Position numbers and translations under genes: made by a program
DNA from: Mobula birostris
Lineage: Eukaryota
DNA length: 64,000 nucleotides
Assembly: GCF_030028105.1 (NCBI RefSeq)
Contig: NC_092386.1
Coordinates: 17,291,258 to 17,355,257 of the forward strand
Direction: 5' to 3'
Shown: positions 7,270 to 63,945 of the stretch, one piece after another
Position numbering within the stretch: the first letter of the stretch is position 1
How the letters are laid out: every line of letters starts with the position of its first letter
The notes under the pieces: generated by a model
What the model saw: the letters and a program-made list of their open reading frames with translations, nothing else
Database searches by the model: none
Told to the model about the DNA's origin: nothing

Positions 7270-8222
7270 CTGCAAGGAAAGAAATAGTATTTAGGAATCT
7301 CTTTACAATCGCAAAAGCTAGCGTTACCCAAATTAGAGATAAATAGGGACCGAATACTACGACACTTATTACTGTCTGATAAAAGCAAATAACAAGCATC
7401 GATTTTGAACAGCTCTGTCAAAAAGCTCTTAAAATTAACGAAAACACAAAACGTTCTTCGTTCCTACATTCAATCGATTTCGATTGTCTAGCTTTCTTAT
7501 TTTACACTTGAGGGGGATCACCATGCGGACTCCTGTTACTCACAGTATACACGTTGATGTAAAAGACAATCTTGTTAATCAATACCCATGGCCGTATTGT
7601 AATGTCACTTCCACCATTACCGTCTAATGTAAATCGCCAATTTTGCCGGGAAACACCGGACCCCATGTTCGGTCGTCATTGAACATGTACGGATTAACTT
7701 ACTCCCGCAAAGTGAACATGTCAGACAAAGGAAGATGTGAGGGAGAAAAAAAATCCAAAAGGAGAGAAAAATAAAACAATTATGTCCTGCAAATGCCTAC
7801 AGTCTTCCAGCACAGCTTGTTCCCAACCTCAGGGTGGCTGTGCGCTGGGCCTTGGATGAACAACAAAGCGCCTGTGGCTGGGGCTGGCGGACCGCACTGT
7901 TCATCCACTTGCAGGCCTCGGCCTAGCGCGCTGCTGCGTCGGTGCGGGTCGGTGGGTCGGTCGGTCGGCCGGCCCGCCCGCCCGGGCCCCTCCACTCCGC
8001 CAACGCCGGCTGCTGATGGAATGTGCGCGGGCGCGCGAGCCCTCCTCTCGGGCTCCCTCCCCCCGGCTCGAGCCGCTTCCCCGGCGGCCGCACGTCAGCC
8101 CGGGAGCTCGCGCTCGGCGTTCCTTCCCCACGCGCCGGGGGCTAACCTTCAGTCCCACACCGCCCGCCCCAAAACGGAGCGGAGGGGAGGGGAAGGGGGG
8201 CAACTCCAGTACGGTTTCTCAC

Positions 8223-8450
8223 CCGGTGCGTCTGTTTTGTTCTCCTTCAGTGTTGCTGTCGTCTCGGGACCCTTGCCCCCTTCCGTTTTCTTCCCCCTTC
8301 CCTTTACTCGCGGGCACACAGACTTCTTTTTTCCTCTCTTCCTCTCTCTCTCTGTCCCTGCCCCCGCAGTTCGGCTGCCGACAGACAGTTTTATTTTGCG
8401 TTCACTATCGCCCTGCCGGCAGACACGGCCGCCATGACTCGCGTTCACAC
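8223..8450 (-). other. CHD1: CHD1 non-coding exon 1 (TSS approximate)
   Basis: Strong donor CGG|GTGAGA (GT at 8222-8221) inside the CpG island, a purine-rich leader and a YY1-like ATGGCGGC near the presumed start. The 5' end is estimated, not observed. Confidence 0.6.
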
Positions 8451-8520
8451 TTTGGGCCGGGAGTCGGACTCACTGCCGATGACGTCAGCCACACCCCGCG
8501 GGGGGGAGGAGGGGGAGAGC
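8428..8520. promoter_or_regulatory. Core promoter motifs: YY1-like, CRE, KLF/SP box, G-rich SP/MAZ tract
   Basis: GCCGCCATG 8428-8436; perfect CRE palindrome TGACGTCA 8480-8487; CCACACCC 8489-8496; G-rich tract ~8500-8519. Confidence 0.65.
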
Positions 8521-10801
8521 GGGACGCTTGACTGGAGAGTGGAGCATGACGGGAAGTTGGTTGACAGGCAGGCCAGGAGTCCCGAGCAGCGAGCGCAGCA
8601 TCTGACCGCTGGACGCGCAGTGCAGCGCAGGCATTTCAAATATGCAGGAGGTCCAAAGGAGGAAACCCCATCCGACCGATCCCAGCTCAAGCCCACGTCT
8701 GAATTCGTCCTCCGAATAGTGTACGGTGGAGTCGCTTTTAAGTAATGTGACTCAATGTCTGTGTGACACATTGAGACGCTGCTACAAGTTCTTCCGAATT
8801 CAAGGGTCAACCACTGAGTCAAAATCCGAATCTACGCTATCAGAGACGGGACTACTAAAATGAGCTCATTTAACACATGAGATACTGGAAATCCTGTTCA
8901 ACACGCACACAGAACGCCGGAGGAACTTTGTGTGTTGATCTACATTTAATACCGAATTTTGTGTATTGCCCAAATTGCTCTGGGGTGCCCTGTCAACTTC
9001 CTGTCCCATCTATTCAGGCTGAACCAAGATGCAAACCGTTTCTTGTAAACATCCTGCTTAATTCTTACCTAACCGTCATAAACCACAAACACAAGAAATT
9101 GTGCAGATGCTGAAAATCCAGAGTGACGCGCGAAATGCTGAGGAACTCAGCAGGGGTAGACAGCATCAGTTCTACAGAGATAAATAAAAGGTCGACGTTT
9201 TAAGTAGAGACCTTTCATCAGGGCTGGAAAGGAAGGGGGAAGAAGCCAGAATAAGAAAATGGGTGAGGGAAGGAGTACAAGCTGTAAAGTGATAGGTGAA
9301 ACCCGATGAGGGGGAAGGTGGTGGGTGGGGGAGGGAGGATGAGGTGAGAAACGAGGAGGTGATAGGTGGAAAGCGCTGAACGAGGAATGTGACAGGAGAG
9401 GAGAGTGGACCATCAGAATCAGGTTTATTATCACCGGCATGTGACGTGAAAGTTGTTAACTTAGCAGCAACAGTTCAATGCAATACATAATATGGAAGAA
9501 AAAAACTAATAATAAATATATAAATTAAAGTATACATATATAAAATAGATTTAAAAAGTGCAAAAAACAGAAATACTATATATTAAAATGTGAGATAGTA
9601 TCCAAGGGTTCAATGTCCATTTAGGAACTGGATGGCAGAAGGGAAGCTGTTCCTGAATTGTTGAGTGCGTGCCTCCAGGCTTCTGTACCTCCTACCTGAT
9701 GGTAACAGTGAGAAAAGGGCATGCACTGGGTGCTGGAGGTCCTAAATAATGGATGCTGCCTTTCTGAGACACTGTTCCCTGAAGATGTCCTGGGAACTTT
9801 GCAGGCTAGTACCCAAGATGGAGCTAACTAGATTTACAACCCCCTGCAGCTACTTTAGGTCCAGTGCAATAGCAACCCCCCTCCCCACAACTCCATACCA
9901 GACAGTGATGCAGCCTGTCAGAATGCTCTCCACAGTACATCTATAGAAGTTTTTGCGTGTATCTATTGACATGCCAAATCTCTCAAAACTCCTAATAAAG
10001 TATAGTGCTGTCTTGCCTTCTTTATAACTACATTGATATGTTGGGACCAGGTTAGATCCTCAGAGATCTTGACACCCAGAAACCTGAAGATGCTCACTCT
10101 CTCCACTTCTGATCCCTCCATGAGGATTGGTGTGTGTTCCTTGATCTTACCCTTCCTGGTACACAATCAGCTCTTTCGTCTTACTGACGTTGAGTACCAG
10201 ATTGTTGCTGCGGCATCACTCTACTAGTTGGCATATCTCACTCCTGTACACCCTCTCGTTACCACCTGAGATTCTACCAACAAGGGTTGTATTGTCAGCA
10301 AATGGTATTTGAGCAATGCCTAGCCACACAGTCATGTGCATATAGAGAATAGAGCAGTGGGTTAAGCACACACCCCTGAGGTGCGCCAGTATTGATAGTC
10401 AGTGAGAAGGATATGTTATCACCAATCTGCACAGACTGTGGTCTTCCGGTTAGTAAGTCAAGAATCCAATTGCAGAGAGAGGACCAGAGGCCCAGGATCT
10501 GCAACTTCTCAATCAGGATTGTGGGAATGATGGTATTAAATGCTGAGCTATGGTTGATGAACATCATCCTGACATGGGTGATTGTATAACCCAGGTGGTC
10601 TAAAGCCATGTGGAGAGCCACTGAGATTGTATCTGCTGTTGACCTATTGTGGCGATAGGCAAATTGCAATGGGTCCAGGTCCTTGCTGAGGCAGGAGATC
10701 AGTGTAGTCATGACCAACCTCACAAAGCATTTCATCACTGTCGATGTGAGTGCTATCAGGCGATAGTCATTAAGGCAGCCCACATTATTCTTCTTGGGCA
10801 C

Positions 10802-10938
10802 CCTCCCCCCACCCTCTTTATAGGGCCTCTGCCCTTCCCTCTTCAGTCCTGATGAAGGGTTCTGGCCTGAAACGTTGACTGATCGTCTCCACAGATGCTG
10901 CCTGACCTGCTGAGTTCCTCCAGCATGTTGTGACAGTT
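10802..10938 (+). mobile_element. Short Penelope terminal-repeat fragment inserted in the Rex1/Babar RT
   Basis: Near-identical to ~46975-47115. Flanked by GCAC (10798-10801, 10939-10942); removing it restores the LINE motif IIPV|PKK. Confidence 0.85.
10843..10882 (+). ncRNA. Minimal type I hammerhead ribozyme (intact core)
   Basis: TCAGTC-CTGATGA-AGG gttctgg CCT-GAAAC-GTT-GACTGA: 6-bp stem I, CUGAUGA box, 3-bp stem II, GAAA, palindromic AACGUU stem III, GUU cleavage triplet. Confidence 0.75.
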
Positions 10939-13019
10939 GCACTGGTATAATTGTTGCCTTTTTGAAGCAAGTGGGAACTTCTGCCCGTAGCAGTGAGAGG
11001 TTGAAAATGTCTTTGAATACTCCCGCTAGTTGGTTGGCACTGGTTTTCAGAGCCTTACCAGGTACTCCATCGGAACCGTCTGTCTTGCAAGGGTTCACTC
11101 TCTTTAAAGACAGCCTAACATCAGCCTCTGAGACAGGGATCACAGGATCGTCAGGTGCAGCAGGGATCTTCACAGCTGTAGTTAGGTTCTCCCTTTCAAT
11201 GTGGGCATAGAAGACGTTGAGTTCATCTGGTAGTGAAGCATTGCTACCATTCATGCTATTGGGTTTCGCTTTGTAGTAAGTAATGTCTTGCAAACCCTTC
11301 CAGAGTTGCCGTGCATCCGGTGTCACCTCCAACCTCATTCGAACTTGTCTCTTTGCCCTTGAAATAGCCCTCTGCAAATCATACCTGGTGTTTTGGTACA
11401 GGCCGGGGTCGCCAGACTTGAAGCCACAGCTCTAGCCTTCAGCAGACGACGTACTTCCTGGTTCACCCATGGCCTTTGGTTTGGGAATGTACAGTAAGTC
11501 TTTGTAGGCACACATTCATCCACACAGGTTTTAATGAAGTCAGTAACAACTGCAGCATTCTCATCCAGGTTCGAAGATGAATCCCTGAATACTGTCCAGT
11601 CCACTGATTCAAAGCAGTCCTGTAAGTGCTCCTGTGCTTCCCTTGTCCAAACCTTCTTGGTCCTTACAACTGGTGCTGCAGTCTTCAGTCTCTGCTTATA
11701 CTCAGGGAGTAGAAGTACAGCCAGGTGGTCAGACTTCCCGAAGTGAGGGTGTGGAATAGCGCAGTAGGCATTCTTGATGGTGGTGTAGCAACGATCCAGT
11801 GTGTTGTTTCCTCTGGTATTGCAAGTGATCTGTTGATGGTAATTGTTCAGTGGTTTTTTTTCAAACTGGCCCGGTAAAAATCCCCCAAAACGATGGTGAA
11901 GGCGTTAGGGTGCGCTGTTTCGTACATGTTGATCCCTTTGCTCAGATCATCTAAAGCCTGCTCACTAGATGAGAAAGGGAAGGTGGACCAGCACTAGAGG
12001 GATTGATAGGCAGGTGACCAGAAGAGAAAGGGTAAGAAGGGAGCCAGAATGGGGACTGGATAAAGGGAGAGGAGGATATACCAGAAGATGAAGAAATCAA
12101 TGTTCATGCTTCAGGCTGGAGACTACCCGAATGGAATAAGAGTTGTTGCTCCTTTAACCTGAGAATGGCCATGCCATGGCAGGAGAGAAGGCCATAGACC
12201 AACATGTTGGAATGGGAATAGGGAGTTCCTCTGCTTAGATGCTGCCTGACCTACTGAGTTGCCTCAGCATTTTGTATGCTACTTCATAAACTCTAAAAAG
12301 TTAATTACTAAATTATCTCTATTTGGTGAAAAGAATGCTGAGTACCTATGCGTCTAACTTTTTTATCCTGGTTTACTCCTTGTCTTTAGAATGGTGGCAC
12401 GTTTAATGAAATGCATTCACACTCTTTGGATAACTCCTGGCTTAGAGAAGAAGGGAAGACAAAGAGGGAACATTAGGCCTAAAGGCTGACAATGAAATTG
12501 AATAGCAAATGTTAGTGGTTAGATTTCCCCCTGGAAATATTCATCATTTGGCTACTGTGTGCATGAATATTGTCACACATCAGCCCACGCTTAAATATCA
12601 TTTATTGCCACATGGAAAAATGGGTTGCTCATTTGCTGAGGACATGACCTTGTGCTTGGTAGATAGCTTTGGAGTGTCTTTGTGAATCATCGTTTACTGA
12701 TGAGATATGAATGGAATTGAACCTTGTACAGTCACCAGCCAGCATTCCCATGCCTGAACTTGCCATGCAAGGAAAGATCACTTATGAAGCAGCTGAGGAT
12801 ACTTAGGATACTGTCCTGAGAAACTCCTCCAGGGAAATCCATCGCTAAGATGTTTGACCTCCAAAAATTGTGGCTTAGTTCCTTTGTCCAAGCATTGGAC
12901 TATTTTCCCTCTGATTTTAGTTTTACTCAGGCTTATGGATGGCACACTTGGTCAAATACTGCCTTGATGCCAAAATCGGTCAATCTCACCTCTGTCTTTG
13001 AATTCAGTTCCTTCTTCCA

Positions 13020-28802: not shown

Positions 28803-29835
28803 ATTCAATTGAATTGACTTTATTTCTTACATCCTTCACACACGAGTGAAAATCTTTATGTTACATCTCCATCTAAATGTGCAATTATTGTAATTTATAA
28901 TAAATAGAACAGTTAATGTAACAAATACACTCAGATGGCCTGGTGGAAGAAGCTGTCCCATAGCCTGTTGGTCCCAGCTTTTATGCTGTGATACCATTTC
29001 CTGGATGGAAGCAACTGGAATAGATTATGGTTGGGGTGACTCGGGGCCCCAAAGATTCTACGGCTCTTTTTACACACCTGCCTTTGTAAATATCCTGAAT
29101 CATGGAAAGTTCATGACTGCAGATGCGCTGGGCTGTCCGCACCACTCTCTACAGAGTTCTGCGATTAAGGCAGGTACAGTTCCCATACCAGGCAGTGATG
29201 CAGCCAGTCAGGATGCTCTCAATTGTGCCCCTATAGAAAGTTCTTATGATTTGGGGGCCCATACCAAACTTCCTCAAATGTCTGTGGTAAAGGGGCGCTT
29301 TTGTGCCTTTTTCTCCACATAGCTGGTGTGTACAGACCATGTGAGATTCTTGGTGATGTAGATGCCAAGGAACAAAGCTGCTTACACTCTCAACCCCAGA
29401 TCCATTGATGTCAATAGGGGTTAGCCAGTCTCCATTTTTCCTGTAAGCCACGTCCAGCTCCTTTGTTTTTGCAACATTGAGGGAGAAGTTGTTTTCTTGA
29501 CACTGCTGTGTCAGAGAAATGACTTCTTCCCTGTAGGCCACCTTGTTATTTCTTGAGATTAGGCCAATCAATGTAGTGTCGTCAGCAAATTTAATTAGCA
29601 GATTAGAGCGGCGGGTGGCGAACAGTCATGGGTATATAGGGAGTAAAGGAGGGGACTTAGTACACAGCCATGAGGGGTTCCTGTGCTGAGAGTCAGAGGG
29701 TTGGAGGTGACGGAGCCCACTCTTACCACCTGCCGGTGATCTGACAGGAAGTCTAGGATCCAGTTGCACAAGGCAGGGTCAAGGCTGAGGTCTCTGAGCT
29801 TCCTGTTGAGTCTGGATGGAATTATGGTGTTGACA
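28803..29835 (-). mobile_element. Rex1/Babar 3' part
   Basis: [15 protein letters not shown] motif at ~29560-29595, ORF 29149-29571, (TTCAA)n tail. Same subfamily as 25585-26145 and 58105-59378. Confidence 0.9.
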
Positions 29836-37875: not shown

Positions 37876-38697
37876 ACGATTTTCAGTTGTAGTTTTTTAA
37901 AATCATTTGCCTCTTTCTTCTACTGTGGCATCAAGTTAGTGCTATAATATATTTCAAATACGATATTAAAATGCCTTGCCTAGAATGCTTCCAATTAAAC
38001 TCTCTTCATTATGTTTATTGTGTTTTTCCCCGCAGATGCTGACTGACCTTCTAGGTATTTTCTTGTTCTCTTTAAGTTCATGTGTTACATTTTCTCTACT
38101 CATTTTAACGGAAAAAGTAGACTTGAGTAACAAGCAGGGAACTCTAGTTTATAAGAAAAGTATTGAAAGGGGGAAATAAATCTCTCCAAAATTATTCACT
38201 TTTTAAAGTGACTACAACCATAGAAATAATGTCAAGTGTAATTTGGTGTTAACATTCTTGGCCCCACATCAGCTAGTTTGGATTCTAAAGTACACAATTT
38301 AAAATAACTTCCAGAGCAATAGTACAGTGATGCTGCTCTTATTTAACTTTGCTGTTTTTTCTTCAACTAGTGCTTAAGAATAGATACTGCACCTCAAAAA
38401 CACATTTTTGGTGTGAGGTGGGGAAGGTTTTATGTAATTACAGTTATTTTATATACACTTCGATTAAGTTTTCTGAAATGTGAATAACTGTAAAATACTA
38501 ACATGGAGACTAGTCGGCTTATGCATTTAACGTAATTGTTGTTGTCTTGTTTTGTCCCTTATTACAAAGGTTTGGAATTTGTTTTGAAAGTTTCCAGTGT
38601 ACTTCCATACTCTGAATGAACTGTAATCACTTATCCTGATCGTTTCTGTTAAAGATTTATTTGCATTCCAAAATAAATTATGCATATCAATATGACA

Positions 38698-38875
38698 GGG
38701 GTATAGGGGGCTCTGGATAGAGGTAGTACCTTTGATATCTGGCATGCTGCTCCCTACTAGACAGGGTGGACGGGCATCATTGGTACTCATCCATCTCCTA
38801 AATCTCTCACGGGTTGGCTCCAAGCGCCATACCCTGGTAAACCGCTTCAGCTGGCGGGCTAAAACACGTGAGAGG
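38698..38875 (+). ncRNA. HDV-like self-cleaving ribozyme (nested double pseudoknot)
   Basis: P1 GGGGUAU (38698-704)/AUACCCU (38829-835) with G1.U wobble. P2 CUCUCACGGGUU (38804-815)/AACACGUGAGAG (38863-874), 1 mismatch. P3 GGC/GCC, L3 UCCAAGC, P1.1 CC/GG (38836-37). P4 CCGCU/GGCGG. J4/2 GCUAA with catalytic C at 38859. Confidence 0.85.
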
Positions 38876-39169
38876 GTGATATTAACACGGCACCACTGGG
38901 CGAAAGACTTCCATGATGAAGTCACCGGCCGGGGCGGAAAAGTTCTCAGATGAACTATAACGGCCACGTGTTCACGACCAAGGCAAGCCAGCTAGTTGGA
39001 GGAAATCGGCTGTGGTCAAACCTGGAGAGGGATGGGCTCCACCAGGTTTCAGATGCCCAAGACACGCCACATGATGAGCACACCAAACTGGTGCAAAGCT
39101 TGTCATGACAGCGCCCCAACGACTCCATCAGGAGTTAAGGGCGCATGAAGAAGAAGAAGAAAGAAGAAG
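38698..39169 (+). mobile_element. 472-bp non-autonomous RTE/RTEX-like retroelement with a 5' HDV-like ribozyme
   Basis: TSD ATCAAT(A/C)TGACA at 38686-38697 and 39170-39181; (GAA)n tail; no RT ORF; no Pol III A/B boxes seen. Confidence 0.8.
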
Positions 39170-40547
39170 ATCAATCTGACACAGTGATTTAAAAAATTAC
39201 GGAGTACCCATGAGATGCTTCAATGGAAAAATCTTAATGGCACAGATCAGAGAGGCATAAAGCTCATTTCAGGCTATGCTAAGTCAGAGTATCTCAGCAA
39301 GCAGGTGGAGTGGAGGACAGATTGGTTTCCTGTGTCTTACCACTATCCAAGAATAATTTCCTGGAAAATAATGTTTAAGTTTTTGAATGAGGATGGGTTT
39401 TAACATAATTTATTTTAAAGTTGACTATCAGTAGATCAGAAAATTTCTATATTACATTGCATCAACTATTTGAATATTTGAAGTTAATTTATTGTACATA
39501 ATCACAATTATAGTGGTTTCAAATATATCACTAGCAGCATACAATTGACATAATAACACCAGAAGATGTTATATAAATATTAATCGTGTGCTGCTGTTAT
39601 TAATTTCATCACACATTCTTGAACAATTGCACATTGTAACACTGAATACAAAATTTACATATTAAAAATCCTGGCTCAATCAGACTATTTTCAATTTGAA
39701 AATTTGCATTTGGAACTAATGAAGAATTTATGCTGCTTCATAATTCATTGTTGGCCTTATATTTGAAATGATGGAACAGATATATATGTAATTTACATTT
39801 CATTTTTATCACAACTTGGTTCCTGCTGTTATGTGGTTTACTTATTTTTCACGAAGTATGGTTAACCATAAAAGTATGGTTGCCAACAACAAAGCAAAAT
39901 AGCACTAACTCCCTGATAAAGCAGTGTTTCTATTTTGAGACCATATTGGTCCTTTTTGTTTCGAACTGATAAATGTACAAGTTTAAAGTTTGAAGTTCAA
40001 TCTCTGATATTTATAAGGGTAAATATAGACATGAAATCAATGAATTCTGCTTCTTTAATTGTTTGATAGAAATCTGAAATCGTCTTTTCTAGTAAAATTT
40101 GGAATGCTATTTTCCATACATTACCACTTTGCATTTACTATTGAATAGGAAGGCTCCTGAATTATTCGATTATCCTTTTAAAATTGGAAATGATAGTAAT
40201 CAGGATCAGAAGTAATGCCAAAAACCTACTAATACTGGGAAGTTGAAGAAACGAAAATTCTGCCTGTGTATAGGTGGCTTACTCTCTGCATGGTCAGCAA
40301 GGTAGTAGGTGAGGATGTTTCAAGGCTTACTTACATGATTTTTGAACATAAGCTAACTTTCTTGCTATTTTCCCTGGCTGCATGCAGCTGAGAATTATGG
40401 TTTCCCAGCTTTACCACCTCACTGAAGCTACAAGTGTCCAACCTTTTTTTTTCCCATCTAGTATATTGAGGAAGCCAGCTTCAGAGGCACAACATATAGC
40501 CGTGCAAATACATTTTATATATATACATAAGCGCACATACATACAAC

Positions 40548-43050: not shown

Positions 43051-43097
43051 GGGGAACAGATTTATAGTAATGTCAGCAAAAGGCAATCGAGGCAGTG

Positions 43098-43329
43098 GAT
43101 CAAAGTAGCTGGTGAACGCAGCAGGACAGGCAGCATCTCTAGGAAGAGGTGCAGTCGAGGTTTCATGCTGAGACCCTTAGTCAGGACTAACTGAAGTCCT
43201 GACGAAGGGTCTCGGCCTGAAACGTCGACTGTACCTCTTCCTAGAGATGCTGCCTGGCCTGCTGCGTTCACCAGCTACTTTGATGTGTGTTGCTTGAATT
43301 TCCAGCATCTGCGGAATTCCTGTTGTTTG
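43098..43329. mobile_element. 232-bp fold-back Penelope-derived element
   Basis: 90-bp inverted arms (43099-43188 / 43195-43284) with a 6-nt spacer; perfect 10-bp TSD CGAGGCAGTG (43088-97, 43330-39). Confidence 0.9.
43195..43230 (+). ncRNA. Minimal type I hammerhead ribozyme (intact core, GUC triplet)
   Basis: AGTC-CTGACGA-AGG gtctcgg CCT-GAAAC-GTC-GACT. Confidence 0.8.
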
Positions 43330-43392
43330 CGAGGCAGTGAATGTTCGCTGCAAAGCCCCACAGATAACCTTCTAAAAAATTACTAGCTAATT

Positions 43393-45408: not shown

Positions 45409-47149
45409 TAAGGCCTCAAAGCATGTCCAATCCCTATGCACCTCCACTCTCCATCAAGAAGGCCTCAAAGCCCTCCGCTACTTTCTGGATAATAGACCTC
45501 ACCAGTTCCCCACCACCACTACCCTCCTCTGTTTGGTGGAACTGGTTCTCACACTCAATAACTTCTCTTTTGGCTCTTCCCACTTTCTTCAGACTAAGGG
45601 TGTGGCTATGGGAACTCGTATGGGCCCCAGCTATGCCCGCCTCTTCGTTGGTTATGTGGAATAGTCTGTGCTCCAAACCTATTCTGGTACTGCTCCCCAA
45701 CTTTTCCTTCGCTACATTGACAACTATATTGGTGCTGCTTCCTGCACCCATGCTGAGCTCGTCAATTTCATCGACTTTACTTCAAACTTCCACCCAGCCC
45801 TCAACTTCACTTGGTCTTTCTTGGACACTTCTCTCCCCTTTCTCGATGCCTCGGTCTCCATCTCTGGAGACAGACTGTCAACTGACATCTTCTACAAGCC
45901 CACTGACTCTCATAACTACCTCAACTATACCTCTTCCCACCCCGCCACATGCAAAAATGCCATTCCCTATTCCCAGTTCCTCCGCCTCTGCTGCATCTGC
46001 TCCCAGGATGAGGCTTTCCGTTCCAGGACATCTCAAATGTCCTCTTTCTTTAAGGATCGTGGTTTCCCTTCTACCGTCATCAATGATGCCCTCACCCGCA
46101 TCTCCTCCATTTCCCGCACTTCAGCCCTCACCCCATCCTCCCGTCACCGCAACAGGGACAGAGTTCCCCTTGTCCTCACCTACCACCCCACCAGCCTCCA
46201 GATCCAACACATTATCCTCTGCAACTTCCGCCACCTTCAACAGGACCCCACCACTAAGCACATCTTTCCCTCTCCACCCTTCTCCACTTTCTGCAGGGAT
46301 CGTTCCCTCCGCGACTCCCTGGTCCACATGTCCATCCCCACGGATCTCCCACCCGGCACTTATCCCTGTAAGCATAAGTGCTACACCTGTCCCTACACCT
46401 CCTCTCTTGCCTCCCTTCAGGTCCCCAAACAGTCCTTCCAGGTGAGGCAACACTTCACTTGTGAGTCTGTTGGGGTCATCTATTGCATCCAGTGCTCCCA
46501 GTGCGGCCTCCTCTACATCGGTGAAACCTGACGCAGATTGGGGGATCACTTCGTCAAGCACCTCCGCTCCGTCCGTCACAACAAACAGTATCTCCCGGTT
46601 GCCACGCACTTCAACTCTGCTTCCCATTCCCATTCGGATATGTCCATACATGGCCTCCTCTACTGCCATGATGAGGCTAAACTCAGGTTGGAGGAGCAAC
46701 ACCTCATATACCATCTAGGTAGTCTCCAGCCCCTTGGTATGAACATAGAATTCTCCAACTTCTGGTAATTTCCTCCCCCTCCCTTCCCCTATCCCTATTT
46801 CACTCTGCCCCCTCCCCCAGCTGCCTATCACTTCCCTCATGTTTCCACCTCCTTCTACTACCCATTGTGTTTCCCCTATTCCTTCTTCACCTTTCCTGCC
46901 TATCCCCTTCCTTACCCCTTTATCTTTCCCCTTACTGGTTTTTCATCTGGAACCTACCAACCTTCTCCTTCCCACCCTCCCCCCACCTTCTTTATAGGGC
47001 CTCTGCCCCTTCCCTCTACAGTCCTGACGAAGGGTTCCGGCCTGAAACATTGACTCATCGTTTCCACGGATGCTGCCTGACCTGCTGAGTTCCTCCAGCG
47101 TGTTGTGAGTGTTGCTTTGACCCCAGCATCTGCAGAGTATTTTGTGTTT
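45409..47149 (+). mobile_element. Penelope-like element (Neptune-type), 5'-truncated, RT + GIY-YIG + terminal repeat
   Basis: One frame broken by stops: GVAMGTRMGPSYA, RYIDN, YKPTD, PCKHKCYTCP, VIYCIQCSQCGLLYIGET, HFNS..QPLGMNIEF. Hammerhead at 47020-47055 (AUU). TSD AGTTATAAT (45400-08, 47150-58). Confidence 0.95.
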
Positions 47150-49496: not shown

Positions 49497-51590
49497 CAAC
49501 ACACAAAAAAATTGCTGGTGAACGCAGCAGGCCAGGCAGCGTCTATAGGAAGAGGTACAGTTGACGTCTTGGGTCGGGATCCTTCGTCAGGACTAACTGA
49601 AAGAAGAGATAGTAAGAGATTTGAAAGTAGGAGGGGGAGATCCAAAATGATAGGAGAAGACAGGAGGGGAGGGGTGGATCTAAGAGCTGGAAAGTTGGTT
49701 GGCAAAAGGAATACCAGGCTGGAGAAGGGAGAGGATCATTGGACGGAAAGCCTGGGGAGAAAGAGAAGTGGGGAGGGGAGCCCGGAGGGTGGAGAGCAGG
49801 CAAGGAGTTATAGTGAGAGGGATAGAGGGAGAAAAAAGAGAGAGAGAGAAAAAAAGGGGGGAATTAAATAAATATATAAGGGATGGGGTGTGAAGGGGAG
49901 GAGGTGCATTAACAGAAGTTAGAGAAAGCAATATTCATGCTATCAGGTTGGAGGCTACCCAGACGGAATATAAGGTGTTGTTCCTCCAACCTGAGTGTGG
50001 CTTTACCTTTACAGTAGAGGAGGCCGTGGATAGACAGATCAAAATGGGAATGGAACATGGAATTAAAATATGTGGCCACTGGGAGATCTTGCTTTCTCTG
50101 GCGGACAGAGCATAGGTGTTCAGCAAAGCGGTCTCCCAGTCTGTGTCAGGTCTCGCCAATATATAAAAGGCCACATTGGGAGCACCGGATGCAGTATATC
50201 ACCCCAGTTGACTCACAGGTGAAGTGTTGCCTCATCTGGAAGGACTGTCTGGGGCCCTGAATGGTGGTGAGGGAGGACGTGTAAGGGCATGTGTAGCACT
50301 TGCTCCGCTTACAAGGAAAAGTGCCGGGAGGGAAGGGATGGGGGGGGTGACGAATGGACAAGGGAGTCGCGTAGGGAGTGATCCTGCGGAAAGCAGAAAG
50401 CGGGGGGGAGGGAAAGATGTGGTTAGTGGTGGGATCCCATTGGAGGTGGCGGAAGTTACGGAGAATTATATGTTGGACCCGGAGGCTGGTGGGGTGGTAG
50501 GTGAGGACAAGGGGAACCCTATTCCTAGTGGGGTGGCGGGAGTATGGGGTGAGAGTAGATGTGCGTGAAATGGGAGAGGTGCGTTTGAGAGCAGAGTTGA
50601 TGGTGGAGGAAGGGAAGCCTCTTTCTTTAAAAAAGGAAGACATCTCCTTTGTCCTGGAATGAAAAGCCTCATCCTGAGAGCAGATGCAGCAGAGATGGAG
50701 GAATTGTGAGAAGGGGATGGCATTTTTGCAAGAGACAGGGTAGGAAGAGGAATAGTCCAGGTAGCTGTGAGAGTCCGTAGGCTTTTTGTAAACATCAGTA
50801 GATAAGCTGTCTCCAGAGGTAGAGACAGGAAGATCTAGAAAGGGGAGGGAGGTGTCGGAAATGGACCAGGTAAACTTGAGGGCAGGGTGAAAGTTGGAGG
50901 CAAAATTAATGAAGTCAATGAGCTCAGCATGCGTGCAGGAAGCAGCGCCAATGCAGTCGTCAGTGTAGCGAAGGAAAAGTGGGGGACAGATACCAGAATA
51001 GGTTTGGAACATGGATTGTTCCACAAAGCCAACGAAAAGGCAGGCATGGCTGGGACCCATATGGGCGCCCATGGCTACACCTTTAGTTTGAAGGAAGTGG
51101 GAGGAGCCAAAGGAGAAATTATTAAGAGAAAGGACTAATTCCGCTAGATGGAGGAGAGTAGTGGTAGAGCGGAACTGGTTAGGTCTGGAATCCAAAAAGA
51201 AGTGGAAAGCTTTGAGACCTTCCTGGTGGGGGATGGAGGTATATAGGGACTGAACATCCATGGTGAAAATAAAGTGGTGGGGCCCAGGAAACTTAAAATC
51301 ATTGAAAGGATTCAGAGCGTGAGAAGTGTCACGAACATAGGTGGGAAGGGATTGAACAAGGGGGGATAAAACCATGTCGAAGTATGCAGAAATGAGTTCG
51401 GTGGGGCAGGAGCAAGCTGAGACAATAGGTCGGCCAGGACAGGTAGGTTTGTGGATCTTGGGTAGGAGGTAGAAACGGGAAGTGCGGGGTGTGGGAACTA
51501 TAATGTTGGTAGCAGTGGATGGGAGATCCCCTGAGCGGATAAAGTTGGTGATGGTGTGGGAGACAATGGCCTGGTGCTCCTTAGTAGGGT
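49497..51590 (-). mobile_element. Penelope-like element (Neptune-type), longest copy; nested in a Rex1/Babar 3'UTR that sits in a Tc1-like element (49046-52210)
   Basis: ORF 50146-51672 (element-derived from ~51590): FYLLPKIHKP..GRPIVS, MDVQSLYTSIP, GVAMG, RYTDD, Cys linker, VIYC..LYIGET. Terminal repeat with mutated hammerhead at 49557-49594. Confidence 0.95.
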
Positions 51591-52229
51591 TTCCTCGTGT
51601 GTGCGTTTTTAATATATATGGAGACAACGTTTCTCCGAACCAGGGTGTAAAGAACAGTAATACACATAACACACAATAACTTATGGAGGTAAGGATAACA
51701 CCTACAGATGAATTAACACATAAATAACAGCCTAATGTGTTTGTACATTATTATTAACTATTGTAAGGTACGAAGCAGATTAGCCAGTGACACTTCGAAT
51801 ATGATGATGTTGGGAGTTCAGAGGCCTAATGGCCTGAGGGAAGAAAGTGTTTCTCATCCTGACTCTTCTTGTTTTTATGCATCATAGTCTTCTGCCTGAT
51901 GGTAGAAAGTCAAAGAAGATTCTGGATGGATGGGTGGGATCCTTAATAATACTAAGGACCCTATGTACACAGCGCTCCTGCTGAATGTCCCCAATGGATG
52001 GTAGGGAGTCCCCTGTGATCTTCTCAGCTGTTCTCAGTCCTTTGTAGGGATTTCTGGTCCAATGCTCGTTTCTTTCTCATTCTGATGTTTGCTCTGAACA
52101 ACAAAACCCTTTGACCAAGTCTGTGCGCTTTTATGCGTTGAGTAGCTGCCACATGATTGGCTGATTTGCATCAACAAGCATGTGTACCTAATAAAGTGGT
52201 CATTGAGTGAATATTGGAGCCATGTAAGA

Positions 52230-58104: not shown

Positions 58105-59378
58105 ATTGAACTGAATTGAATCGAATTGACTTTATTTCTTACATCCTTCTCATACATGAGGAATAAAAATTTTTACGTTACGTCTCCATCTAAATGTGCA
58201 ATATGCAATCATAGTAATTTATAATAATTTATAATAAATAGAACAGTCAATGTAATATAGAGTACACTCTAACCATCGTGAGTTCATCAGTCTGATGGCC
58301 TGGTGGAAGAAGCTGTCCTGGAGCCTGTTGGTCCTGGCTTTTATGCTGCGGTACCATTTCCCGGATGGTAGCAGCTGGAATAGATTGTGGTTTGGGTGAC
58401 TCGGGTCCCCAATGATCCTACGGGCCCATTTTACACACCTGTCTTTGTAAATGTCCTGAATCATGGGAATTTCACAACTACAGATGCGCTGGGTTATCCA
58501 CACCACTCGCTGCAGAGTCCTGCGATTGAGGGAAGTACAGTTCCCATACCAGGCAGTGATGCAGCCAGTCAGGATGCTCTCAATTGTGCCCCTGTAGAAA
58601 GTTCTTAGGGTTTGGGGGCCCACATCAAACTTCTTCAACTGTCTGAGGCAAAAGAGGCGCTGTTGTGCCTTTTTCACCACACAGCTGGTGTGTACAGACC
58701 ATGTGAGGTCCTCAGTGATGTGGATGCTGAGGAACAAAGCTGTTTACCCTCTCAACCCCAGATCCATTGATGTCAATATGGGTTAGCCCGTCTCCATTCC
58801 TCCATAATCCAGAACCAGCTCTTTTGTTTTTGTGACACTGAAGGAGAGGTTGTTTTCTTGACACCGCTGTGTCAGAGAGAAGACTTCTTCCCTGTAGGCC
58901 ACCTTGTTATTGTTTGAGATAAGGCCGATTAATGTAGTGTCATTGGCAAATTTAATTAGCAGATTGGAGCTGTGAGTGGCAATACAGTCAAGAGTATACA
59001 GAGAGTAAAGGAGGGGACTCAGTACACAGCTCTGAGGAGCTCCTGGATTGAGAGTCAGAGGGGTGGAGGTGAGGGAGCCCACTCTTACCACCTGCTGGTG
59101 ATCTAACAGAAAGTCCAGGATCCAATTGCACAAGGCAGGGTCAAGGCCGAGTTCTCTAAGCTTCTTGTCGAGCCTGCATGGAACTATGGTGTTGAATGCT
59201 GAACTGTAGTCCAAGAACAGCATTCTCACATAAGCATCCTTCTTCTCCAGATGTGTAAGGACGGTATGTAGAGCAGTGGCTATTTCGTCATCTGTCGATC
59301 AATTGTGTCAGTAGGCGAATTGTAGGGGGTCCAGTTTGTGTGGTAGCAAGCTGCAGATGTAATCCTTGACCAGCCATC
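58105..59378 (-). mobile_element. Rex1/Babar 3' part (RT)
   Basis: ORFs 58783-59229 ([38 protein letters not shown]) and 58219-58737; (TTCAA)n tail. Confidence 0.92.
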
Positions 59379-61974: not shown

Positions 61975-63945
61975 TGTCCATGTGTGTGCCTGAAGATGCG
62001 TTGTTTTGAAAGAAACGTGCCAGGCTAACGACTGTCACCTGCACATGTATTGTCCTAGTTAAGATTTCTACAGCTATGCTGTGAGGTATTTTATTTCAGT
62101 AGTTTTCTGTTAAAGCAGTGTGTCCTGTTGGAAAGAGTGTGTTGGCTTCGGCTGAAGATAAGGAGCCATGTTGTCCAACTTGGGAATGTGTGTCTACCAA
62201 TCAGGATTGTGGGATGTGAGAGAAGGTTCGAGAGAGCTGTGGGGAAGAGTTTTCGGGAAAACAGTGGTCTGGTTTGGGGTCTTTTGGTTGGAGCTGCGGA
62301 GCAGGGCACAAGGGAAGGTGCAGCAGAATGCCATTGGAAAGACAGTCCCCATTGCAAGAAGTGCTTTGTACAGATGAGTACCTTCAAGGAGTGAGGGCCA
62401 GTACTCCTGAGAGAGCCAGTTCATTCGAGAGGGTCTTCGAGGGGAGTTTGGAATGTGGCATGTGCTTTCACACAGACAGTGGGTCCAGCACATGAGTAAA
62501 GACTCCCTGACTACTCCAAATGAGCTCCAGTGTTGTGTGCACATTGGACTGGTTTAGCTATAATGGGTGCTTTTATTTTTCTTTTCTTTTTCTGTAACTC
62601 TCTGTATCAATATTGCTCAATATCATCATCATCATCGGGTGCTGTGCCCAGTTTGAGCTTTGACTGCCATGGCCCACACGCTCCTGTTTTGGGTCAAATG
62701 GATCAGTTCATTGGTATTCATTTCCAGTTCTCTGGCTGCTGTCTCCATCATCATTTGTCTTTGTCTTCCTCTTGCTTTCTTCCCTTCAATCTTTCCCATA
62801 ATTACCATGCATTCTAACCCCTCTTTCCTAATCACATGTGCAATGATGTTATATTGCCTTTTCATGATCTCATACATTATTCCTCTTTTTCTGTTTGCTC
62901 TGTTCATGACATCCTTGTTAGATATTCATTTTGTCCATGATATTCCTTGCATCCTCTTCAAAAACCATATCTCTGCTGCTACAATTCGTTTCCTCGTGTT
63001 ACTAGATATTGTCCAACATTCTGAGCCATATAACATAACTGGATAAACGTAACATTTCAGTACTCTGAGGTGGGTTGTCATGCCTAGTTTACTCTTCATT
63101 CTCATAAAGGTGTCTTTTGCCATCCCTATTCTTCTTTTGATGTCCATGTCGCATCTGCCATCTGATGTCACCCAGCTTCCTAAGGAGCAAAAGTTCTGTA
63201 CTTGTTTTATGTCTTCCCCATTTATTCTCAGCCTGCAAATAGATTCTCCTTCTTTTTGGATATCACCATACATTCTGTCTTTTTGCAATTGATAGATAGA
63301 CTCATTTTTGCACTTTCTTCAACAGCTATATCAATTAAGTTTTGTAGTTCTTCCTCCTTGCTTGCAATTAACAGTGTCATCTGCATATCTGAAATTATTG
63401 ATGTTTTCACCACCAACTTTGATTCCCAAGATGTCTCTTATTTTTTGTAATATTGTTTCACTGTACACAATAAATAAATCAGGGGAGCAAACACACCCTT
63501 GTCTAACGCCTCTCTTGATTTTCGTAAACTGACTCACTTCTCCATCTATTCTTACAGCGGCAGTTTGTTCCCAGTACAGATTCCTGATTAGGTGGAGGTC
63601 CTTCAAATCTAGTTTTGAATTTTCTGTAATATTTCAAATAACTTATTGTGCTTCACTTTATCAAATGCTTTTGTGTAGTTGATAAAACAAATATACTTGC
63701 TCAATATACTTCCTTTATAACTCTATGCTGGTGTGCAATCTGTCATTTTGGGCTACAGGTAACAGTGCATTTACACAGCATTCGCTACAACCTCTGGTCC
63801 GTAATTGGGACATCCTAACTTTCCTGTTTGGTTGAACCCCAAATCATACCAGCTCTAGACGTATATTGTATATGAAAGGTGGCCTTCTCACTGCTGAGTC
63901 ACATGACCATTAGCAGAGTTGGCTAACGAGCCAAGTTGCTGTACA
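61975..63945. mobile_element. Possible solo LTR hosting the RTE insertion
   Basis: Non-coding and LTR-like in composition, continuous across the RTE TSD; termini not established. Confidence 0.35.
62624..63696 (-). mobile_element. RTE-clade LINE, 5'-truncated
   Basis: GVRQGCVCSPDLF, RYADDT, PVMLYGSECWT, GKIEGKKARGRQR; (TGA)n tail; 11-bp TSD TTGCTCAATAT (62613-23, 63697-707). Confidence 0.92.

What the first reader, a model, noticed from the sequence alone, without database searches (positions are those of the whole stretch)
38698..39169. A ribozyme-headed short retroelement: complete HDV-like ribozyme whose cleavage site is exactly the element's first base
Seen: a 472-bp non-coding insert with a 12-bp TSD (1 mismatch) and a (GAA)n tail. 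Its first 178 nt form every element of the HDV fold. P1 is 7 bp and opens with a G.U wobble (GGGGUAU/AUACCCU); P2 is 12 bp with one mismatch; P3 is GGC/GCC. L3 UCCAAGC keeps the U20, C21, C22 and G25 equivalents, P1.1 is CC/GG, P4 is present, and J4/2 GCUAA carries the catalytic C (38859). The 99-nt J1/2 folds into two hairpins of its own (38705-38755, ~38765-38795). G1 is the first base after the left TSD, as expected if the inserted cDNA copied a self-cleaved RNA to its very end. Established: HDV-like ribozymes define the 5' ends of R2, L1Tc and several RTE LINEs, and Drosophila R2 SIDEs are non-autonomous elements that keep the ribozyme. Inference: this is a promoter-less SINE-like family that cuts itself out of host read-through transcripts and borrows RTE/RTEX machinery. 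I am not aware of one described in cartilaginous fish. Each sense-oriented copy could also truncate host RNAs.
Basis: partly seen in the sequence, partly recalled or inferred. Interest (0 to 1): 0.9.

Follow-up and report, generated by a model that had tools for sequence, protein, structure and literature searches.

The report
Ribozyme-headed short retroposon in a ray
A 472-base jumping-gene copy in a ray genome starts exactly where its own hepatitis-delta-type self-cutting RNA fold would cut; this is a well-supported new example of an arrangement already known from flies and trypanosomes.

Summary
38698-39169 is a non-coding insert with an 11/12 target-site duplication and a (GAA)n tail. Its first 178 nt satisfy a full HDV-like descriptor: 1 hit in the window, 0 in 200 shuffles. 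The predicted cut site is the first base after the duplication.

Contigs of three coded species show single-copy flanks and depth of 10^3-10^4 inside the element. In 31, 30 and 13 contigs the match ends at 38698. The family majority repairs this copy's P2 mismatch, and one subfamily flips the middle P3 pair.

Points against:
- The family majority reads C, not T, at 38835. The canonical G.U at the cut site is therefore a minority state and probably CpG decay.
- No Rfam HDV family matches.
- J1/2 is no more structured than shuffles.
- No RNA evidence was found, and no partner LINE. The RTE attribution is untested.

The kind is known from R2 SIDEs, NARTc/SIDER and ribozyme-headed RTE/baggins. This scan had already noted such elements on other DNA of this genome (49 notes, three follow-ups).

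Verdict: new member of a known kind, moderate interest.

The parts
38686..38697 (+). left target-site duplication, ATCAATATGACA
   Evidence: 11 of 12 identical to 39170-39181
38698..38704 (+). P1 5' strand, GGGGUAU; the predicted cleavage is 5' of G38698, the first base of the element
   Evidence: contigs of other copies stop matching here (table 7)
38705..38803 (+). J1/2 insert, 99 nt
   Evidence: it folds, but no better than shuffles. Long J1/2 loops are known in R2 ribozymes (PMC3774820).
38804..38815 (+). P2 5' strand
   Evidence: G38812 is mismatched in this copy; the family majority has T there, which pairs with A38866.
38816..38828 (+). P3 (GGC/GCC) enclosing L3 (UCCAAGC); C38820 and C38821 form P1.1
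   Evidence: A subfamily in run X11 reads GCC/GGC, with the middle pair flipped (loose end behind 38811).
38829..38837 (+). P1 3' strand (AUACCCU) followed by the P1.1 GG
   Evidence: T38835 gives G.U here; the family majority is C, 77%, 67% and 55% of depth in X1, X6 and X11.
38842..38857 (+). P4 hairpin, 5 pairs with a 6-nt loop
   Evidence: -6.7 kcal/mol, z -2.07
38858..38862 (+). J4/2, GCUAA, with the putative catalytic C at 38859
   Evidence: its position matches the CNRA rule of the descriptor (recalled)
38863..38874 (+). P2 3' strand
   Evidence: The family majority has C at 38864 and G at 38873.
38875..39004 (+). body of unknown origin
   Evidence: Depth is similar to the head (table 2). 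A weak, unproven likeness to an RTE C-terminal motif was seen.
39005..39146 (+). structured 3' module of three hairpins; from about 39018 it is shared with a far more abundant family
   Evidence: -57.2 kcal/mol, z -3.99, 0 of 200 shuffles as good; depth 13,000-45,000 at 39012-39083, and loose ends before 39018 in 28, 30 and 58 contigs.
39147..39169 (+). (GAA)n tail
39170..39181 (+). right target-site duplication, ATCAATCTGACA

Best explanation
This is an aged copy of a high-copy, non-autonomous, non-LTR retroposon family of rays. It differs from the family majority at 17 or more sites. The family has no promoter-type head.

Proposed mechanism:
1. A source copy is transcribed as part of a longer host or neighbouring transcript (inferred).
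2. The first 178 nt fold into an HDV-like double pseudoknot, which cuts the RNA just 5' of G1 (inferred from fold and boundary).
3. The freed RNA carries a three-hairpin 3' module and a (GAA)n tail. A LINE reverse transcriptase uses these in trans for target-primed reverse transcription.
4. Copying runs to the very 5' end and leaves a roughly 12-bp duplication. The duplication, tail and boundary are shown; the enzyme is not identified.

I cannot tell whether the family arose as an internally deleted LINE (SIDE type) or as a head-plus-tail composite.
For: Fold and boundary in this copy:
- All parts of the fold are present.
- There is 1 descriptor hit in the window against 0 in 200 shuffles.
- The ordinary minimum-energy fold recovers P2, P3 and P4 unaided.
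- The predicted cut site is the first base after an 11/12 duplication.

Family evidence (1214, 1270, 1142 and 15 contigs laid for X1, X6, X11 and X17):
- Flanks have depth 5-11, the element 10^3-10^4.
- Contigs of other copies stop matching at 38698 in 31 (X1), 30 (X6, plus 14 at 38699) and 13 (X11) cases. What lies beyond agrees poorly between copies (0.41-0.46).
- The family majority has T at 38812 (96-97% of depth), which removes this copy's only P2 mismatch.
- In the 40 best-supported difference rows shown, no row falls in P3, L3, P1.1, P4 or J4/2 except 38835.
- A subfamily of 8 contigs (agreement 0.87) has P3 GCC/GGC instead of GGC/GCC, a change on both sides that keeps the pair.

Other support:
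- No pol III-type head: ARAGORN finds 0 tRNAs, and there is no tRNA, 5S or 7SL match in Rfam at E up to 10.
- The 3' module has z -3.99.
- Parts of the element occur in runs of 7 coded organisms.

Precedent: ribozyme-started LINEs and their short derivatives are described in PMC3414825 (abstract), PMC4035085 (passages) and PMC6765202 (passages). J1/2 loops of 216-498 nt occur in R2 ribozymes (PMC3774820).
Against: - No cleavage assay was done and no RNA data exist. All runs are contigs and none is on record as RNA.
- No Rfam HDV-like family matches, even at E up to 10 on 651 nt or on 90 nt.
- The family majority at 38835 is C, giving a G-C pair at the cut site. HDV itself needs the G1:U37 wobble (PMC1874588 passage; PMC8495972 passage). 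T accounts for only 23%, 33% and 45% of depth, and the site is a CpG.
- The family majority C at 38864 would mismatch T38814, unless 38814 also differs. No such row is among those shown; 118 rows are hidden.
- Covariation evidence is one pair in one subfamily.
- The letters just before G1 in other copies end in the same AAATT in all three runs. A few shared letters 5' of G1 in part of the family therefore cannot be excluded.
- J1/2 is not more structured than chance.
- No partner LINE was found. The descriptor is partly post hoc.
Confidence: 0.7

Rival explanations
1. The family is specifically a SIDE-type internal deletion of an RTE LINE. The LINE's 5' ribozyme is joined to its last few hundred bases, and the parent RTE moves the element.
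For: - Earlier follow-ups of this scan reached this reading for other short ribozyme-headed elements of the same genome (not checked here).
- RTE and baggins LINEs carry HDV-like ribozymes (PMC6765202 passage).
- The RTE fragment in the window also ends in a trinucleotide repeat, (GAT)n.
- A profile of 16 RTE C-termini aligns to two collinear stretches of the element. Only 1 of 1000 shuffled strands scores as well.
Against: - The profile score is only 4.3 bits in all. Its first stretch overlaps the 3' third of the ribozyme, which makes no sense for a coding remnant.
- There is no DNA or translated similarity to the window's RTE.
- The tail repeat differs: (GAA)n here against (GAT)n.
- The 3' module is far more abundant than the head, 18-45 times in X11. 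Contigs diverge before 39018 into a semi-conserved A-rich stretch, which looks like a shared tail module rather than one parent.
Confidence: 0.35
2. The fold is a fossil or a structural element and does not cut. The fixed 5' end comes from transcription starting at G1 from an internal promoter, as Pr77 of L1Tc/NARTc also does.
For: - The majority G-C at the cut-site pair should weaken an HDV-type ribozyme.
- No Rfam match.
- Pr77 is both a promoter and a ribozyme (listing abstracts; PMC4035085 passage).
Against: - No pol III-type head was detected.
- A complete double pseudoknot whose P1 starts at base 1 is unexplained by a promoter alone.
- The family majority keeps or repairs P2, and P3 covaries in a subfamily.
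Confidence: 0.12
3. The HDV-like fold is a chance resemblance in an ordinary retroposon copy.
For: The descriptor was written after seeing the candidate. J1/2 up to 120 nt gives freedom in placing P1. Rfam finds nothing.
Against: - 0 hits in 200 shuffles of 64 kb on both strands.
- Only one P1 placement fits, and it is the first base after the duplication.
- The family majority repairs P2.
Confidence: 0.04

Closest known systems
R2 SIDEs and R2/R1 hybrid SIDEs of Drosophila (PMC3414825; abstract read)
   Same: Both are short non-coding elements made of a 5' HDV-like ribozyme and a LINE-type 3' end, moved in trans by target-primed reverse transcription. The ribozyme makes the exact 5' end. The hybrid SIDEs show that head and tail can come from different elements.
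   Different: SIDEs sit in rRNA genes at fixed sites, are rare, and have identified parents. This family is dispersed and high-copy in several ray species, has a (GAA)n tail and a 12-bp duplication, and has no identified parent.
NARTc, RIME and SIDER elements of trypanosomatids with the Pr77/L1TcRz head (PMC4035085 passages; PMC3185411 and PMC3383444, listing abstracts only)
   Same: [quoted passage not shown] For several of the trypanosomatid elements co-transcriptional cleavage was shown.
   Different: Pr77 is 77 nt and is also an internal promoter. The ribozyme here is 178 nt with a 99-nt J1/2. No promoter function is known for it, and the host is a vertebrate.
RTE, baggins, R4/Dong and R2 LINEs with 5' HDV-like ribozymes (PMC6765202 passages; PMC3774820 passages and section 15; Ruminski 2011 is not held)
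   Same: The cut lies at the element's first base, a long J1/2 is tolerated, and the elements have no promoter and rely on co-transcription.
   Different: Those are autonomous and coding. This element has no ORF with relatives.
Hammerhead-bearing SINE-like elements of schistosomes, and Penelope-like elements (PMC6765202 passages)
   Same: A self-cleaving ribozyme is carried by a short retroelement.
   Different: The ribozyme class and the logic differ. Those elements process multimers and depend on pol III or on tandem copies.

Membership tests
HDV-like self-cleaving ribozymes | Nested double pseudoknot with P1, P1.1, P2, P3 and P4 in the canonical order | tested here: met
   every helix was checked base by base. 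1 hit in the window, 0 in 200 shuffles.
HDV-like self-cleaving ribozymes | G at +1 opening a P1 of at least 6 bp, with the cut 5' of it (PMC8495972 passage) | tested here: met
   G38698 opens a 7-bp P1.
HDV-like self-cleaving ribozymes | G.U wobble as the cut-site pair (PMC1874588 passage; PMC8495972 passage) | tested here: inconclusive
   This copy has G38698.U38835. The family majority is C at 38835: 77%, 67% and 55% of depth in X1, X6 and X11.
HDV-like self-cleaving ribozymes | L3 with U and G for the reverse wobble and two C for P1.1. The G in L3 is needed in Nasonia R2 (PMC3774820 passage). | tested here: met
   L3 is UCCAAGC at 38819-38825. CC pairs with G38836 and G38837.
HDV-like self-cleaving ribozymes | Catalytic C in J4/2 | tested here: met
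   C38859 lies in GCUAA, between P4 and the P2 3' strand. Its role is inferred from position only.
HDV-like self-cleaving ribozymes | Divalent-ion-dependent self-cleavage | not testable with these tools
   Needs an in vitro transcription and cleavage assay.
Rfam HDV-type families (HDV, CPEB3, drz and others) | Match to a curated covariance model | tested here: not met
   Searches (gathering threshold, whole window; E up to 10, 651 nt; E up to 10, 90 nt): no HDV-type family was listed. The 99-nt J1/2 and the sequence diversity of this class make this a weak negative.
SIDE-type internally deleted LINE | Shares both the 5' head and the 3' end with an autonomous parent LINE | tested here: inconclusive
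   No parent is in the window. Other genomic DNA could not be fetched. The RTE-remnant test scored 4.3 bits.
Classical SINE | Head derived from a pol III gene (tRNA, 7SL or 5S) with an internal promoter | tested here: not met
   ARAGORN finds 0 genes. No such Rfam match at E up to 10.
Non-LTR retroposon inserted by target-primed reverse transcription | Target-site duplication, 3' repeat tail, and dispersed copies with a common 3' end | tested here: met
   11/12 duplication and (GAA)n tail. High-copy family with unrelated flanks in three species.

The most novel reading that the evidence does not exclude
Rays carry a vertebrate SINE-like family, of roughly hundreds to thousands of copies by a crude depth ratio, shared by several species. 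Its RNA 5' end is made by a 178-nt HDV-like ribozyme rather than by a pol III promoter. Its source copies work with a Watson-Crick G-C at the cut-site pair, where HDV requires G.U. The head is coupled to a 3' module borrowed from a much larger repeat family. If so, it is a natural, large-J1/2, G-C-tolerant HDV-like variant and a genome-wide source of self-cutting sites inside host transcripts.
Probability: 0.2. Interest if true: 0.6.

Novelty: new member of a known kind. Interest (0 to 1): 0.4.

Why it matters
It adds a vertebrate, high-copy, multi-species case to the short list of non-autonomous retroposons that start at an HDV-like ribozyme (R2 SIDEs, NARTc/SIDER).

It offers a natural test of how strict the G.U rule at the cut site is, because the family majority reads G-C while this copy reads G.U.

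If the ribozyme is active, sense copies in introns would cut host pre-mRNAs, which is testable in ray transcriptomes.

The principle is already in print, and this scan had already met such elements elsewhere in the same genome. The gain is in breadth and detail, not in kind.

Tried and rejected
1. Other copies in the window. blastn with word size 7 found none; the best other hit was 22 nt at E 0.3.

2. Rfam. Nothing at gathering scores in the whole window. No HDV-type family at E up to 10 on 38600-39250 or on 38796-38885.

3. A spurious 73-aa ORF across the ribozyme, used as a handle to find other copies in the protein collection. 2 candidates shared words and none scored.

4. The RTE route to a partner LINE.
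- The window's RTE piece found 7569 relatives at E up to 0.001, and the best 150 were listed.
- Local tblastn of those 150 against the element gave only weak hits, best E 0.008.
- A profile of 16 C-termini gave 3.7 and 0.6 bits. 1 of 1000 shuffled strands did as well.
- I treat this as unproven.

5. An exact 19-letter core searched in metagenome contigs. 2 loci were returned. They share only the 19 letters and have no HDV-like context, so they are chance matches.

6. J1/2 as a structured domain is not supported.

7. tRNA-like head: none.

8. Host gene and its orientation were not determined. RNA evidence was not available.

9. The search of earlier findings by sequence was blank.

10. Ruminski 2011 and Webb 2009 are not held. 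What I say of them comes from a review's passages and reference list. Supplementary files were not opened.

Full report
WHAT IS THERE

Positions 38698-39169 form a 472-bp insert.
- It is flanked by ATCAATATGACA (38686-38697) and ATCAATCTGACA (39170-39181), 11 of 12 alike.
- Both repeats abut the insert, which ends in a 23-nt (GAA)n tail at 39147-39169.
- A given 12-mer recurring with at most one mismatch at a fixed place has a chance of 37 in 4^12, about 2 in a million. This is my arithmetic and ignores the freedom in choosing the boundaries.
- The longest sense ORF is 73 aa and has no relatives.
- The window holds no second copy.

THE FOLD

I checked each helix base by base.
- P1: 38698-38704 with 38829-38835, seven pairs, the first G.U.
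- P2: 38804-38815 with 38863-38874, eleven pairs and one G/A mismatch at 38812/38866.
- P3: GGC/GCC.
- L3: UCCAAGC.
- P1.1: C38820 and C38821 with G38837 and G38836.
- P4: 38842-38846 with 38853-38857.
- J4/2: GCUAA, with C38859.

An ordinary minimum-energy fold of the 179 nt recovers P2, P3 and P4 unaided. P1 crosses P2, so such a fold cannot show it.

I wrote a descriptor from recalled HDV-like rules: P1 of 7 bp starting with G, J1/2 up to 120 nt, P2 of 6 or more pairs with one mismatch allowed, P3 of 3 bp, L3 TYCNNGN(N), P1.1, P4 of 4 or more pairs, and CNRA.
- It finds one hit on both strands of the window, 38698-38875.
- It finds none in 200 dinucleotide shuffles of the window.
- A laxer version also finds only this site; it was not shuffled.
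- The descriptor came after the candidate, so the figure is somewhat flattering.
- The independent point is that the only P1 placement that fits starts at the first base after the duplication.

Negative results:
- No Rfam HDV-type model matches, at gathering scores or at E up to 10 on 651 nt or 90 nt.
- A long J1/2 is not odd in itself. R2 ribozymes have J1/2 loops of 216-498 nt in silkmoths (PMC3774820, passages).

THE FAMILY

Parts of the element occur in contigs of 20 runs from 7 coded organisms. None is on record as RNA, and no run holds more than 0.45 of the sampled words.

I laid four runs on 38400-39470 at 80% likeness. The runs were X1 (organism A), X6 (C), X11 (E) and X17 (A, labelled "RNA? 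probably DNA"). The numbers of contigs laid were 1214, 1270, 1142 and 15.

Depth:
- The flanks have depth 5-11.
- From the bin 38688-38723 to the bin 39120-39155 the summed depth is 10^3 to 10^4. The tool warns that this is not a copy number.
- The highest depth, 13,060, 25,020 and 44,788, is at 39012-39047.

Loose ends:
- Contigs of other copies stop matching at 38698 in 31 (X1), 30 (X6, plus 14 at 38699) and 13 (X11) cases.
- The median loose length is 255 letters, and those letters agree poorly between copies (0.41-0.46).
- So what lies 5' of G1 differs from copy to copy.
- Only 24 loose-end rows were shown; 373 were not.

Caveats:
- The place of a loose end is set by where this copy's flank begins.
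- All three consensus strings end in the same AAATT just before G1, whereas this copy has GACA there.
- This may be target preference, a repeated context, or a few extra letters in part of the family. I cannot tell which (note).

WHAT THE FAMILY SAYS ABOUT THE FOLD

One search showed 40 of 158 difference rows, the best supported. In 17 of the rows that fall within the element, the other letter holds more than half of the X1 depth. This copy is therefore an aged one.

Four of those 17 lie in the 38804-38875 core:
- 38812: this copy has G, the majority T (96-97% of depth). T pairs with A38866, so this copy's only P2 mismatch is private.
- 38873: the majority has G (81-99%), which turns a U-A pair into U.G.
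- 38864: the majority has C (89-94%), which would mismatch T38814. No row for 38814 is among those shown.
- 38835: the majority has C (77%, 67% and 55%), which turns the cut-site G.U into G-C.

The site 38835-38836 is a CpG in the majority, so this copy's T is most simply CpG decay. HDV itself needs the G1:U37 wobble, and changes reduce activity (PMC1874588, introduction passage; PMC8495972, passage). This is the main point against an efficient ribozyme in the source copies. I recall, without a call, that Watson-Crick pairs there slow HDV rather than kill it.

No shown row touches P3, L3, P1.1, P4 or C38859.

One subfamily in X11 (8 contigs, agreement 0.87) diverges behind 38811. It reads P3 as GCC/GGC in place of GGC/GCC, with L3 UCCAAGA. 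The middle P3 pair is changed on both sides and still pairs. That is the only two-sided change I could see. The contig sequences themselves are not available to me.

THE 3' END

Positions 39005-39146 fold into three hairpins at -57.2 kcal/mol, z -3.99, with 0 of 200 shuffles as good. The last hairpin ends just before the tail.

From about 39018 the sequence is shared with something far more abundant.
- Contigs diverge before 39018 in 28, 30 and 58 cases, into a half-conserved stretch ending in a run of A.
- In X11 the 3' module has 18-45 times the depth of the head.

This is what a LINE-derived tail module shared by several repeat families looks like.

THE PARTNER

The partner was not found.
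- The window holds a 5'-truncated RTE at about 62627-63780 on the minus strand, ending in (GAT)n. It has no DNA or translated likeness to the element.
- I searched its 120-aa piece against the representative library. There were 7569 hits at E up to 0.001, and 150 were listed.
- A profile of 16 of their C-termini aligned to the element at 3.7 and 0.6 bits. 1 of 1000 shuffled strands did as well.
- The first stretch overlaps the ribozyme's 3' third, so I do not trust it.
- Two exact 19-mer matches in metagenome contigs are chance.
- The RTE/RTEX attribution therefore rests on tail type and on analogy.

NOT A CLASSICAL SINE

ARAGORN finds no tRNA in 38500-39400. Rfam at E up to 10 lists no tRNA, 5S or 7SL match.

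AGE AND SHARING

X1 contigs cover both junction regions without a difference: record 1 covers 38400-38726 and record 8 covers 39116-39470. Organism A is therefore the window's species.

An X6 contig covers 38452-38725 with 4 differences. That is only 28 letters inside the element, below the tool's 31-letter rule. Presence at the same site in organism C is likely but not shown.

WHAT IS KNOWN

- R2 SIDEs are a 5' ribozyme joined to a 3' end, and hybrid SIDEs combine an R2 ribozyme with an R1 tail (PMC3414825, abstract).
- NARTc, RIME and SIDERs keep the HDV-like Pr77 head, and several were shown to cut (PMC4035085, passages).
- A review states that baggins and RTE elements carry HDV-like ribozymes and lack promoters. 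[quoted passage not shown]
- A full-text search combining HDV-like, ribozyme and retrotransposon with shark, skate or elasmobranch (at least 4 of 6 terms) matched 24 papers, of which 15 were listed. None of those listed describes such an element in cartilaginous fish. That is one search of one library, not proof of absence. Repbase and Dfam were not available.
- This scan already holds 49 notes with the words HDV and ribozyme in this genome. Three follow-ups on other pieces called such elements ribozyme-headed deletion copies of an RTE LINE and an already known kind. I did not test those. By length and drawing they seem to be other families.

VERDICT

  - The ribozyme-defined 5' end is the best reading (0.7).
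  - The partner and the cutting itself are open.
  - The G.U is not a family feature.
- This is a new member of a known kind, interest 0.4.

Noticed in passing
window 62627-63780 (-): 5'-truncated RTE-type LINE fragment. Its ORF runs to within a few bases of a (GAT)n tail. Its 120-aa piece has 7569 relatives at E up to 0.001.
   Followed up: partly
window 45668-46531 (+) and 50146-51672 (-): Two related long ORFs with a weak RVT_1 match (27.9 bits, below the cut-off, for the second). Their C-terminus looks like the GIY-YIG end of Penelope-like elements; that motif is recalled, not tested.
   Followed up: no
window 43088-43339: Another first-stage note on this window reports a 232-bp fold-back with two opposed hammerhead motifs. 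It lies next to the Penelope-like ORFs. I did not examine it.
   Followed up: no
window 10295-11377 (-), 58219-59229 (-), 29149-29571 (-): Fragments of another LINE family with RVT_1 matches (53.9 and 40.5 bits) and ALKBH8_N Pfam matches on the part behind the RT. The window is rich in retroelements.
   Followed up: no
window 39018-39087: This stretch of the element's 3' module is shared with a far more abundant repeat family. Depth reaches 44,788 in X11, and contigs diverge before 39018 into a half-conserved stretch ending in a run of A.
   Followed up: partly
just 5' of 38698, in other copies (table 7): The consensus of the flanks of other copies ends in the same AAATT in all three DNA runs. 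This may be a target-site preference or a few extra 5' letters; it is unexplained.
   Followed up: no
window 7793-8822: G+C-rich stretch with long ORFs on both strands that look non-coding and have no Pfam match for the one tested. It may be a CpG island; the host gene was not identified.
   Followed up: no
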